In this document: positions 50,136 to 63,117 of the stretch, piece after piece
Numbering within the stretch: position 1 is the first letter of the stretch
Layout of the letters: each line of letters begins with the position of its first letter
Source: Zygnema circumcarinatum SAG 698-1b
Lineage: Eukaryota; Plantae; Zygnematophyceae
NCBI GenBank assembly: GCA_037447605.1
Contig: CM074814.1
Coordinates: 372,001-436,000 of the forward strand
Length of the DNA stretch: 64,000 nt
Direction: 5' to 3'
The notes under the pieces: model-generated
Told to the model about the DNA's origin: nothing
The model's input: the letters and a program-made list of their open reading frames with translations, nothing else
The model's database searches: none
Position numbers and translations under genes: made by a program

Positions 50136-58211
<8,076 letters not shown>

Positions 58212-59110: not shown

Positions 59111-62100
59111 ATGGCTACCGCGTGGGCGGCGCAGTGCGCCACGTGTAGCCCTGTGGTGCGCGCGGTCGTGGCCGAGGGGGCGGCCGTCAGCGCAGAGCGC
59201 GTGGCGGTCGGGGGAGGGCGCGCGCGGGGGCGGGCGGCGGGCGGCGCGCAGAGGGCGCAGGCGGGAAGGGGGCGGAGGGCGGGCAGGCCGCTAAGGCTCA
59301 GAGTGGCGGCGCAGGAGGCGGGCACCAGCACGGGTGAGGGAGGGGGGGGAGGGAGGGGGGGAAGGAGAGGGGAGAGGGGGGGGTAGGGGAGAGGGTGGGG
59401 TAGGGAGGGGAGGGAGGGAAGGGGAGGGGAGAGGAGGGAGAGGAGGGGAGGGAGAGGAGGGGGAGGGAGGGAGGGAGGANNNNNNNNNNGGAGAGGAGGG
59501 GGAGGGAGGGAGGGAGGAAGGGAGATGAAAAGGAGTGGAGGGGGAGGGGGGAGGGAGGGGAGGAAAGAGGAGGGAGAGGAGAGAAAGGGAGTGAGGGAGA
59601 GAGGGGGGGAGGGAGGGAGGTGAAATGGAGGGGGAGGGAGAGGGGGGAGGGGGAGGGGGAGGGAGGGAGGGAGAGGTGGGAGAAAGAAAGAGGGAATGGG
59701 AGGTAGGGTGAGGCAAAAGGCGGGGAAAAGAGGATGGAAGCGGGTGGGGAGGAGGGAGTGGGAGAAAGAAGTGAAGATGGGTGGGAGAATGTTGGGATGG
59801 GGCAGGACATGGAGTGAGTGAGGAGGGTGGGCAGTGGGAGGAAAGTGGGAGGGTGAATAGAAGGAGAAAATGGATATTGGGCAGCTGAGAAAGTAGGTGG
59901 GAAGGAGGAGAGGGAGGGAGGAAGAGGTAGGGGCTCGAAGAGGGGGTGGCTGAGAAAGGAAGGGGAAATGGTAGGGCATACCTTTAATAAGAGATGGCTT
60001 TATGAGATGATTGAACAGCCTTGACTGCGGATGTTTCTGCAAGACCTTTCTTTTATACTCCCTCTTTTTTTTTTTGCTGGTGATCTGCTGACATATTCTG
60101 AGCTTGTCATTAAACACTTTGTCTTACGATTTATCCCCAGTCATCTTTGAATTTGTGGAGCTCCTCCTGCTAAAGACCTGCAGAACAGTTTCTGACTGTG
60201 ATGTGAAGCAGACAATGGCTGACTTTGTGAACCTTTTCTGACCGGCATTTCACCGTTTTCAACTTTTTTGAGTTGCTGCTTTGACCTAACCTTCCAATGA
60301 CCCTCCTTCCTTCCATTTTCTTGCTGAGTTGCCTTCTCTCTTCATCTTCTCGTGAACTCTCCTCTCCCTGCACTGCTGAAGTTGGCTTGGACCTTCAAAA
60401 AGAAACCCTCCTGTAAACTCCTGTAAGCGTGATTTCCGAAATTTCCATCAGATCTTCACCCATACTTTAGTCCGCATTTTTCGGCGACATTCTGCCCGCT
60501 TGTAAGATTCCTTCCTGCTTCCTGCAGTGGTTGCTCAAGAAGTGGAGTTCACGTGGTCGGGCCCCGGCAGTGAGGTCCTCCTCACGGCTGACTTTCTCAA
60601 CTGGGACACAAAGCTTGCCCTGAACAAGGCCGGAGGGGGGCCCTTCCAAGTGAAGCAGGCACGTCGTTACCATCACTTTATCAAGCAGTTTCTTCGTTCT
60701 CATAACTTTATCGAGCAGATTCGCAGTTTCGCAGCGGAGGGGTAGAGCGTGTATTGCATGGACGTATGGGAGGCTATGGGGGGAGAGGTAATGCATGTCT
60801 AATGGGGCTGAGGGCAAGCCCCGAGCTGCGGAAATCAGCTCAGCATATAGAGTTAGGAGTCCCATAAGCATGGCAGTATATGTGAGGATAGGCAAAGAGG
60901 ATAGATGGTCATGTGTTGTGCATGTTATGAGCCGACTCCTCTCTCCCTCCGCTCCCTCTCCCTTCCTCCTAGCTTCCTTGGCTCGTCTCTACTCCTCCCT
61001 CCCACCTCCCTCCCCCTCTCTCCTCACTGTTTAGTACCCAAAAACCTGCAAAGTAGCCGCATCATCCAGCTTTCCGATGTTTGCTAGGCCTTCCATTCTG
61101 TCTAACGGATTAGCTCACAGCAGCCCTACCCTCGTGTAGCACCCCAAGTCAGCACTTTTTCTCCCTCTCCCACTTTCTCTCCCTTAGTTAATCCTTTTCT
61201 CTCCCTGCAGAAGCTCCCTCCTGGCAGTTACGCGTACAAGTTCATAGTTGACGGAGTGTGGCAGCACACTCCGGACCGGCCCACAATAGAGGATGGGACG
61301 GGGGGCCTCAACAATGTCGTCACAGTGGCAGGTCGGCTCTCAACCTCTCTTAGCAAATAAGGCGGGGATGAAGGAATCAAATCGGAATACTTTTCATGTT
61401 AGGGTAGGGCACGTAGCGCGGTTGTTGGAAGGCGGAAGGAGAAGTCGGTCCCTACATTTGTGAATTTTTGAGCTGTTGATTGAGAGCGGTCTTCTTACAA
61501 ATCGAATGACGTCTTCGCTTTCTTGCCACGTAAACTTATCTCTGGTTTTTCACCAAAAACCAATCACACCTCGGTTTGCGGCGAAGCCATCCCATCTTTC
61601 ACGTTGTGACTGAATTTCCATGGACTGCCTCTTATGATGAAGTTTCTAAGTATCACCTCATTGCAATGTTTGAGAACTTCCTTTTCCTTAGTGGGTGTGT
61701 GCTCTATCACCAAACCTGAGCTCCCAAGTTTGTGACTTCAAACCACTCCACTCCTTCCTTCATAATGCTCTGAACCCCAAAACCCAAATGTTAGCATTAT
61801 AACACAAACCCACATAGATATATGTCCAATTTCTTTGGCTTGCAGAGGCTCCCTCTCCTCCCCCTTCCCCTCCCCCTCCTACTCCAAAGGAGCCGGTAGC
61901 TGTGAAGGCTGAGGAGGCAAAACCGGCCCCAAAAGAAGCAGCTGCGGGAGGGAAAGCAGTAGGAAAGGCAGCCGGAAAGAAGGCAGCTGCAAAGGCAATC
62001 GGAGCCGCCATGGAGGAGGATATCATTCCTCTCTTGAGGGCTGCTTTGGAGAAGGAGGTTGGGCTGATTGGGCTTACTCTCACCTTTGAGGAGAATCAGG

Positions 62101-63117
62101 TGATTGGAAATTTCGGACCTTGAAAGCTTGAAAATTGAAGTTGTGGAATAGAGTGTGTTGATGGGATAATGGGGGGGGGGGGTCGATTCTGCGAAAAAAC
62201 GGTGGAAAAAATGTTGTTTTTTAGGTAGAGTGAACCTGGACCGAACTTAGGGGGATGTTCATTGCTTGCCATGGGCGTGCAAGATTGACACGCCTTGATA
62301 TGGGAAGAACGAGAAGCATGGATAGGGATTTGTTCTGTTAGCAGGGGAGAAAAAATTAGGTGAAGGATAGGGGGAATTGCTATGCTGTAAGGAATTGGGT
62401 TGTGCCCGTATTGACGTTCCTTTGCATCTTTTGAAGCCAATCTCACCGGAGGTTGTGTGTGTGGTGCCTGCAGTTGCGCGGAAGCTTCCTGAAGGACGGA
62501 GTTCCGTATGCCTTTTGGTGTTATTTCCCGGATGGCAAATTGGAAGGTACATGCGTGAAAACTGAGGATCTCGTTCTCCTTCTTCCCCCCCAACTTCCCC
62601 TCACAAGCACTTCCTTCCGCCTCTCTCCCTCTCCCTCCCCCGCCTCCTCTCACAAGCACTGTCCTCCCCCTCTCTCGCTCCTCCTCGCTGTCCCACTCAC
62701 TAACACTGCCATCTCTCTCTCGCCTCCTCTTCTCCCTCTACCTCCCCCACTTCCTCTCACAAGCACTGCCCTCTTCCTCTCTTGCCTCCCCCTCTCCCTC
62801 TACCCCCCCCCCCCCTCCTCTCACAAACACTTCCCTCCTCACTTGCCCCTCCCTCTTCCTCCGTCTCCCTCCCTCTCCCTCTCTTCCAAACACTTCCTGC
62901 ACCCCCCCCTTCCCTGCACTTCTCTAATTCTTTCCTCTTTTTTCTTCTTTCCTCTCCTTCCCCTGCAGGGGCCCGTGGATTCTCCCTCGCCACTCACGGA
63001 GGCGAACCGAGCACTGTAGAGCCCTTCCTTATCGATGAGAAAAGGATCCTTCCAGACCTTCTCGTGTTCTGGGTTCAGAAGAGGCTCTTCGCCCAGAAGC
63101 TTCTCTCTCTCAACTGA
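59111..63117 (+). CDS. NdhV: Plastid-targeted CBM48 (AMPK1_CBM-type) + NdhV (DUF2996) fusion protein, about 316 aa
   Basis: Six phase-compatible exons: 59111-59333, 60528-60658, 61211-61331, 61846-62099, 62474-62546, 62969-63117. Ala/Arg-rich transit peptide; CBM48 VEFTW..EVLLTADFLNWD...LPPGSYAYKFIVDGVW...NNVVTV; NdhV MEEDIIP...FWCYFPDG...GFSLATHGGEPSTVEPFLIDEKR...VFWVQKRL. Confidence 0.88.

What the first reader, a model, noticed from the sequence alone, without database searches (positions are those of the whole stretch)
59111..63117. NDH subunit NdhV carrying an in-frame starch-binding CBM48 domain
Seen: transit peptide, CBM48, Pro/Ala/Lys linker and NdhV domain splice into one open frame, with no stop or second start between the domains. 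Known: NdhV is a loosely bound NDH subunit near the ferredoxin-binding site, and the cyanobacterial and angiosperm versions I know are single-domain. In plastids, CBM48 domains bring proteins such as PTST and SEX4/LSF to starch. Inference: the fusion could tether the NDH complex or thylakoids to starch (for example a pyrenoid starch sheath), or sequester NdhV on starch so that cyclic electron flow responds to carbon status. I know of no description of this architecture.
Basis: partly seen in the sequence, partly recalled or inferred. Interest (0 to 1): 0.9.

Follow-up and report, generated by a model that had tools for sequence, protein, structure and literature searches.

The report
Photosynthesis subunit with starch-gripping domain
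In this alga, and also in mosses, liverworts, clubmosses and ferns, a small switch-like subunit of a photosynthetic electron pump carries an extra domain of the kind that grips starch; the seed plants sampled lack it and I found no paper describing it, so it may be an overlooked link between stored starch and photosynthetic electron flow.

Summary
The fusion is real. Six exons give a 316-aa transit peptide-CBM48-linker-NdhV frame. Four of five splice joints, including the CBM48/NdhV joint, are seen in transcript-like contigs from three studies. The N gap lies inside intron 1; that joint is inferred, not displayed. The fusion is not peculiar to this genome. It occurs in Chlorokybus, Klebsormidium, Zygnematophyceae, mosses, liverworts, lycophytes and ferns, with identical intron positions in the four other gene structures mapped. 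It is absent from cyanobacteria, a prasinophyte, one Ginkgo model and all angiosperm hits. CBM48 is a symmetric two-exon cassette, gained in early streptophytes and lost in seed plants; a lycophyte annotation shows it skipped as an isoform. The four glucan-binding residues are almost invariant, and the CBM is as conserved as NdhV. A pyrenoid-specific role is unlikely because pyrenoid-less plants keep it. Best reading (0.5, binding untested): the CBM shares loosely bound NdhV between starch and NDH, tying NDH activity to starch status or location. No paper searched describes it; a 2024 moss PSI-NDH study lists NdhV as having no database record. The scan's notes on this genome showed no earlier report of it.

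The parts
59111..59333 (+). Exon 1: putative chloroplast transit peptide (aa 1-74; 21 Ala, 12 Arg, 3 Glu, no Asp); ends in a phase-1 intron
   Evidence: covered by contigs of X1 and X6; targeting is inferred from composition and homology, not tested
59334..60527 (+). Intron 1 (GT-AG, phase 1), containing the N gap 59480-59489 within a GA-rich repeat
   Evidence: joint inferred from contig ends and from the same intron position in Closterium, Calypogeia, Marchantia, Physcomitrium, Diphasiastrum
60528..60658 (+). Exon 2: first half of CBM48, with the AMPK W100-equivalent Trp (60602-60604); GC donor, phase 0
   Evidence: Pfam, PDB, splice joint
61211..61331 (+). Exon 3: second half of CBM48, with K126, W133 and N150 equivalents (61238-40, 61259-61, 61310-12); ends phase 1
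   Evidence: joint to exon 4 in three studies
61846..62099 (+). Exon 4: Pro/Ala/Lys-rich linker (about 56 aa, to about 62009) and first helix and strand of NdhV
   Evidence: linker disordered in the model of the Closterium ortholog
62474..62546 (+). Exon 5: NdhV core strands
62969..63117 (+). Exon 6: NdhV C-terminal part with the dibasic ferredoxin-side pair (63040-63045) and the C-terminal helix; stop codon
   Evidence: joint

Best explanation
The gene is the plastid NdhV ortholog in its ancestral streptophyte form: an intact glucan-binding CBM48 on a flexible leash in front of a normal NdhV domain. Shown here: the architecture, its splicing, its age and distribution, conserved binding-site residues, and two separately folding domains in a model. 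From the literature: NdhV comes on and off NDH and raises ferredoxin binding and activity in proportion to its dose. Inferred: the CBM binds starch granule surfaces or malto-oligosaccharides in the stroma and so sets where, and how much, NdhV is available to NDH. Either starch soaks up NdhV and damps cyclic or chlororespiratory flow when carbon stores are full, or it concentrates NdhV on stroma thylakoids next to granules so that NDH there is activated. The sign of the effect cannot be decided from sequence.
For: W100, K126 and W133 equivalents in 41/41 complete CBMs and N150 in 39/41; these four are the critical glucan contacts of AMPK beta1 and do erode in some plant SnRK1 beta subunits (PMC4032982). 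Mean pairwise identity is 0.60 for the CBM and 0.61 for NdhV across algae to ferns, while the linker varies from 39 to 153 aa. Model of the Closterium ortholog: both domains pLDDT above 90, linker below 50, pTM 0.48; the CBM superposes on AMPK CBM 1z0m at 1.0 A. The dibasic pair matching T. elongatus R122/K123 is kept. NdhV is transient and dose-dependent (PMC7021789; PMC6992706). Starch granules form between thylakoids (PMC10801857).
Against: No binding, localisation or mutant data. Conserved residues do not prove binding, and the L146 and T148 equivalents differ from AMPK. The seed plants sampled run NDH without the domain, one zygnematophyte-like transcript lacks it (P0101), and a lycophyte annotation has a skipped isoform, so it is dispensable for core NDH function. 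No seed-free plant NDH structure or proteome found here shows NdhV at all.
Confidence: 0.5

Rival explanations
1. The CBM serves starch rather than NDH: NdhV docks a glucan-binding module on thylakoids, helping to place starch granule initiation or to keep granules against stroma lamellae, much as PTST2 and MFP1 do in Arabidopsis.
For: Intact binding site; a thylakoid-anchored glucan-binding system fixes granule position in Arabidopsis (PMC10801857); the flexible linker could span a membrane-granule gap.
Against: NdhV is loosely bound and missing from most purified NDH, so it is a poor anchor; no coiled coil for recruiting starch synthases was seen in the model.
Confidence: 0.17
2. The CBM48 is a protein-docking module that holds NdhV on NDH, PSI or a partner in lineages without the extra stabilising subunits of angiosperm NDH; glucan binding is secondary or absent.
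For: AMPK-type CBMs also make protein contacts (own knowledge). Family-specific residues outside the sugar site are strongly conserved, e.g. Asp at the S96 position 38/41 and at the S144 position 41/41. Moss NDH lacks SubL and PnsB2-3 (PMC11629750).
Against: All four sugar contacts are near invariant. The SubL and Lhca6 additions are angiosperm-level, whereas the cassette is already missing in the Ginkgo model.
Confidence: 0.18
3. Soluble-sugar sensor: maltose or short malto-oligosaccharides released during starch breakdown bind the CBM and change the affinity of NdhV for NDH, switching on dark chlororespiration.
For: AMPK-type CBM48s bind short glucans (cyclodextrin complexes); NdhV is a dose-dependent activator.
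Against: No confident contact between the two domains in the model and a linker free to vary fourfold in length, which argues against direct allostery; competition with starch for the CBM would fold this into the best explanation.
Confidence: 0.08
4. Pyrenoid-specific tether of NDH or thylakoids to the starch sheath.
For: Several algae with the fusion have pyrenoids (own knowledge).
Against: Equally conserved in mosses, liverworts, lycophytes and ferns, which have no pyrenoid; the prasinophyte Pyramimonas NdhV has no CBM. A secondary pyrenoid use in algae is not excluded.
Confidence: 0.05
5. Neutral passenger or gene-model artefact.
For: Dispensable in seed plants; skippable in frame.
Against: Spliced joint in three studies; full fused transcript in about 146 short Logan contigs for the moss protein; CBM as conserved as NdhV.
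Confidence: 0.02

Closest known systems
NdhV (DUF2996/PF11210; T. elongatus Tlr0472, Synechocystis Sll0272, Arabidopsis NdhV)
   Same: C-terminal domain is orthologous: Pfam and PDB hits, dibasic ferredoxin-side pair, introns 4 and 5 shared with an angiosperm NdhV gene, P/A/K-rich N-terminal linker.
   Different: Carries a CBM48 between transit peptide and linker; all characterised NdhV proteins I found are single-domain.
AMPK/SNF1/SnRK1 beta-subunit CBM48 (AMPK1_CBM, PF16561)
   Same: Best sequence and fold match; W100, K126, W133, N150 equivalents kept.
   Different: No beta-subunit C-terminal domain; plastid-type leader; L146 and T148 equivalents differ; partner is a photosynthetic complex subunit.
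Plastid CBM48 proteins PTST1-3, SEX4, LSF1
   Same: Non-catalytic CBM48 in a plastid protein; LSF1 and SEX4 are PDB hits (E 7e-18 and 8e-13 with the family profile).
   Different: Those carry coiled coils or phosphatase domains and act in starch metabolism; here the cargo is an electron-transport regulator.
Database entries of the same fusion (Marchantia Mp1g06650/MARPO_0043s0057, Physcomitrium XP_024363498, Selaginella LOC9631897, Closterium CLOM_g20919, Mesotaenium ME000104S10603)
   Same: Same domain order; same five intron positions and phases in the Marchantia, Physcomitrium and Closterium genes (Selaginella and Mesotaenium gene structures not mapped).
   Different: Annotated only as hypothetical or AMPK glycogen-binding domain protein; not recognised as NdhV in the moss PSI-NDH study (PMC11629750).

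Membership tests
NdhV (DUF2996) | DUF2996 domain, homology to solved NdhV | tested here: met
   PF11210 E 4.8e-11 on exon 6; 6khi_V E 8e-7
NdhV (DUF2996) | Two adjacent basic residues facing ferredoxin (R122/K123 in T. elongatus) | tested here: met
   K292/R293 align with them; both basic in 19 of 28 fused orthologs checked, one basic in the rest
NdhV (DUF2996) | Orthology with seed-plant NdhV | tested here: met
   Tree; shared introns with Catharanthus
NdhV (DUF2996) | Physical association with NDH via NdhS/NdhI and stimulation of cyclic electron flow | not testable with these tools
   Needs co-IP and activity assays; the moss proteomic table did not look for it
CBM48, AMPK-beta type | Beta-sandwich fold and PF16561 match | tested here: met
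   ortholog model rmsd 1.0 A to 1z0m
CBM48, AMPK-beta type | Glucan contacts W100, K126, W133, N150 | tested here: met
   All four present in the window; 41/41, 41/41, 41/41, 39/41 in the family (residue list from PMC4032982)
CBM48, AMPK-beta type | Measured binding to starch or glycogen | not testable with these tools
   Needs a pull-down or ITC
SnRK1/AMPK beta subunit | C-terminal domain that binds the alpha and gamma subunits | tested here: not met
   C-terminus is DUF2996; no such Pfam hit on any exon or on the Marchantia ortholog
PTST / SEX4 / LSF starch proteins | Coiled coil or dual-specificity phosphatase beside the CBM48 | tested here: not met
   Only PF16561 and PF11210 found; linker is disordered
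Plastid stromal protein | Cleavable transit peptide and stromal location | tested here: inconclusive
   Ala/Arg-rich, acid-poor leader ending in a motif shared with moss and Marchantia; no predictor available

The most novel reading that the evidence does not exclude
From early streptophyte algae through ferns, photosynthetic complex I has had a built-in starch sensor: its activating subunit is held on, or released from, starch granules, so that cyclic and chlororespiratory electron flow is set directly by the starch store; seed plants dropped this feedback by deleting a two-exon cassette, and some lycophytes toggle it by splicing.
Probability: 0.3. Interest if true: 0.9.

Novelty: new variant of a known kind. 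Interest (0 to 1): 0.72.

Why it matters
It corrects the picture of NDH evolution: the single-domain NdhV of Arabidopsis is a derived state, and the subunit reported as having no record in moss exists under a misleading glycogen-binding name. If the CBM binds starch, it would be a direct physical link between a thylakoid electron-transport complex and the carbon store, of which I know no precedent (own knowledge). It bears on how cyclic electron flow is matched to carbon status, and it can be tested at once in Physcomitrium and Marchantia, where the ortholog is identified and the cassette can be removed in frame.

Tried and rejected
Two separate genes or a mis-join: rejected by splice joints, by the absence of an in-frame start upstream of exon 4 and by orthologs. 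GT donor at 60649/50 for exon 2: in frame, but contigs use the GC donor after 60658 and orthologs keep the three extra residues. Lineage-specific novelty and pyrenoid correlation: rejected by distribution. Degenerate, sugar-blind CBM: rejected by residue counts. Chara braunii: only exons 5-6 lie on a gappy scaffold end, so the state is unknown. Ginkgo, Selaginella isoform P0005 and Diphasiastrum isoform P0020 had no locus on record by exact look-up; the Ginkgo absence rests on one gene model and could be a skipped isoform. No CBM remnant in the Catharanthus locus. Donor of the cassette not found: PDB points to AMPK-beta type, Atlas hits are generic AMPK1_CBM clusters, plant and bacterial. Run X7 (same species label) did not hold the gene. 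A skipped isoform in this organism was neither seen nor excluded. Papers: NdhV+CBM48 and NdhV+starch-binding gave 0; DUF2996 gave 2, of which the one read mentions no carbohydrate domain; in the broader searches no listed paper held NdhV together with a CBM term. Gao 2016 was not held and Fan 2015 Plant J was not read, so a passing mention there cannot be excluded.

Full report
Observation. The region holds a six-exon gene on the + strand: 59111-59333, 60528-60658, 61211-61331, 61846-62099, 62474-62546, 62969-63117. It translates to 316 aa with one terminal stop. Searched exon by exon, exons 2 and 3 cover the two halves of Pfam AMPK1_CBM (CBM48 type) and exon 6 matches DUF2996. Exon 6 also matches chain V of the cyanobacterial NDH-1L structure 6khi, and exon 3 matches the AMPK beta CBMs, LSF1 and SEX4. 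It was assembled only in local scripts, and database orthologs stood in for whole-protein steps.

Transcription and the gap. Contigs of three runs from three studies show joints 60658/61211 (GC-AG), 61331/61846, 62099/62474 and 62546/62969. One contig in X2 carries all of exon 3 and exon 4, so CBM48 and NdhV are on one molecule. The runs are not recorded as RNA, but spliced contigs lie beside much shallower intron contigs, which is what RNA libraries give. The N run at 59480-59489 is inside intron 1 and cannot affect the frame. The exon 1/2 joint was not printed because the tool skipped the GA repeat. Two indirect lines support it. First, the exon-1 contigs of X1 and X6 stop at 59329 with 33 unplaced letters, which equals three letters plus a 30-letter overlap with the exon-2 contig that starts at 60527. 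Second, exon 1 ends in the same motif and phase-1 intron as in moss and Marchantia.

Distribution. A search with exon 6 found a Mesotaenium protein with both Pfam domains. From it, and from two further searches, 47 database sequences with both domains were collected, isoforms and near-duplicates included. Named sources are Chlorokybus, Klebsormidium, Netrium, Closterium, Mesotaenium, Calypogeia, Marchantia, Riccia, Physcomitrium, Ceratodon, Sphagnum, Selaginella, Diphasiastrum, Adiantum, Pteridium and Ceratopteris; two SM000 models are Spirogloea by my knowledge of the identifiers. In one search, 21 of 107 hits had the CBM, one was a lycophyte isoform without it, and 85 lacked it; every named one of those 85 is an angiosperm. 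Ginkgo (one model), the prasinophyte Pyramimonas (complete, with leader) and all cyanobacterial hits are single-domain. On a tree of the NdhV domain alone, Ginkgo plus angiosperms form one clade (99/93) among the fused sequences. The window groups with an unnamed EukProt transcript (99/90), and one CBM-less transcript from run ERR2041121 groups with Closterium (93/87). The short domain does not resolve deep branches, so the order of events rests on the accepted plant phylogeny (own knowledge): gain in the streptophyte stem, loss in seed plants, and a second loss or skipped isoform in a zygnematophyte-like sample. Hornworts, Mesostigma and other gymnosperms were not sampled; Chara is undetermined.

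Gene anatomy. All five intron positions and phases (1,0,1,0,1) are the same in the window, Closterium, Calypogeia, Diphasiastrum, Physcomitrium and Marchantia. The CBM is thus a symmetric phase 1-1 cassette of two exons, and removing it leaves an open 232-aa leader-linker-NdhV. Catharanthus has that structure, with one phase-1 intron where the cassette was and no remnant found. Diphasiastrum has annotated isoforms of the same gene with and without the cassette, joined at those same sites; these are annotations, not reads I checked.

Is the CBM functional? The four residues critical for AMPK beta1 glucan binding (W100, K126, W133, N150; PMC4032982) correspond to W100, K128, W135 and N152 here. 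They are present in 41, 41, 41 and 39 of 41 complete CBMs. The same paper notes that some Arabidopsis SnRK1 beta subunits have lost two of them, so they are free to change. Mean pairwise identity is 0.60 for the CBM and 0.61 for NdhV, while the linker ranges from 39 to 153 aa and keeps only its Pro/Ala/Lys richness and net positive charge. A model of the Closterium ortholog has two confident domains, a disordered linker and pTM 0.48; the CBM overlays the AMPK CBM at 1.0 A. This is a domain on a leash under strong selection, with an intact sugar site. Binding itself is not shown.

Mechanism. NdhV sits on NdhS/NdhI at the top of the stromal arm, is easily lost, supports ferredoxin binding and raises activity in a dose-dependent way (PMC7021789; PMC6992706); its ferredoxin-side basic pair is kept here. 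A glucan-binding domain on such an exchangeable activator most simply shares it between starch and NDH. That would either damp NDH when granules are large, or enrich the activator on thylakoids next to granules, which form between thylakoid membranes (PMC10801857). I give this 0.5 without fixing the sign. Rivals are a role in granule placement (0.17), protein docking (0.18), soluble-sugar allostery (0.08), a pyrenoid-only tether (0.05) and neutrality (0.02).

Comparison with what is known. It is an NdhV by every sequence test available, it has a CBM48 of AMPK-beta type, and it is neither a SnRK1 beta subunit nor a PTST or SEX4/LSF protein. The domain pair is visible in automated annotation, where UniRef names the proteins after the glycogen-binding domain. 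No paper in the searched library links NdhV with CBM48 or starch binding. [quoted passage not shown] The original Arabidopsis and Synechocystis NdhV papers of 2015-2016 (Fan; Gao) could not be read, so a passing remark there is possible. Three look-ups in the scan's notes for this genome showed no earlier report of this fusion.

Verdict. Real, ancient, conserved and apparently undescribed: a new variant of a known subunit. It is less exotic than a one-genome invention but more important, because it appears to be the normal NdhV of seed-free plants and can be tested in two model species. Interest 0.72; function unproven.

Noticed in passing
window 54500-58211 (+), gene starts further upstream: Co-oriented upstream gene with an AAA ATPase exon (PF00004), FtsH-like by eye, stop at about 58211. 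A 3838-letter contig of run X1 runs from NdhV exon 1 about 3.5 kb further 5', probably overlapping UTRs or read-through from this gene; a contig across two genes does not show one transcript.
   Followed up: partly
window 60659-60660; L006:2775-2776: Intron 2, in the middle of the CBM cassette, has a GC donor here and also in Diphasiastrum, but GT in Closterium, Calypogeia, moss and Marchantia.
   Followed up: partly
L006:501-5910 (Diphasiastrum O6H91_04G031500): Annotated isoforms with and without the CBM cassette, plus N-terminally truncated ones; a possible splicing switch for starch binding.
   Followed up: partly
L001:141-752 (run ERR2041121, P0101): Complete CBM-less NdhV transcript that groups with Closterium; independent loss or skipped isoform in a probable zygnematophyte.
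   Followed up: partly
P0177 and relatives (Physcomitrium, other mosses and some liverworts): The first residue of the ferredoxin-side basic pair is Ser or Asn in several bryophyte orthologs, and the Funariaceae-like moss sequences also differ in the C-terminal helix.
   Followed up: no
P0113: A single-domain NdhV-like protein is listed from the haptophyte Diacronema (Pavlova) lutheri in EukProt, JGI and Logan; unexpected, since haptophyte plastids are thought to lack NDH (own knowledge). Contamination or a retained orphan.
   Followed up: no
P0147, P0151 (ENA metagenome contigs): Divergent eukaryote-like single-domain NdhV proteins of unknown source with long Ala-rich leaders.
   Followed up: no
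P0100: A 670-aa Closterium-like model joins a retrotransposon polymerase-like stretch to the CBM48-NdhV gene; most likely a gene-model artefact.
   Followed up: no
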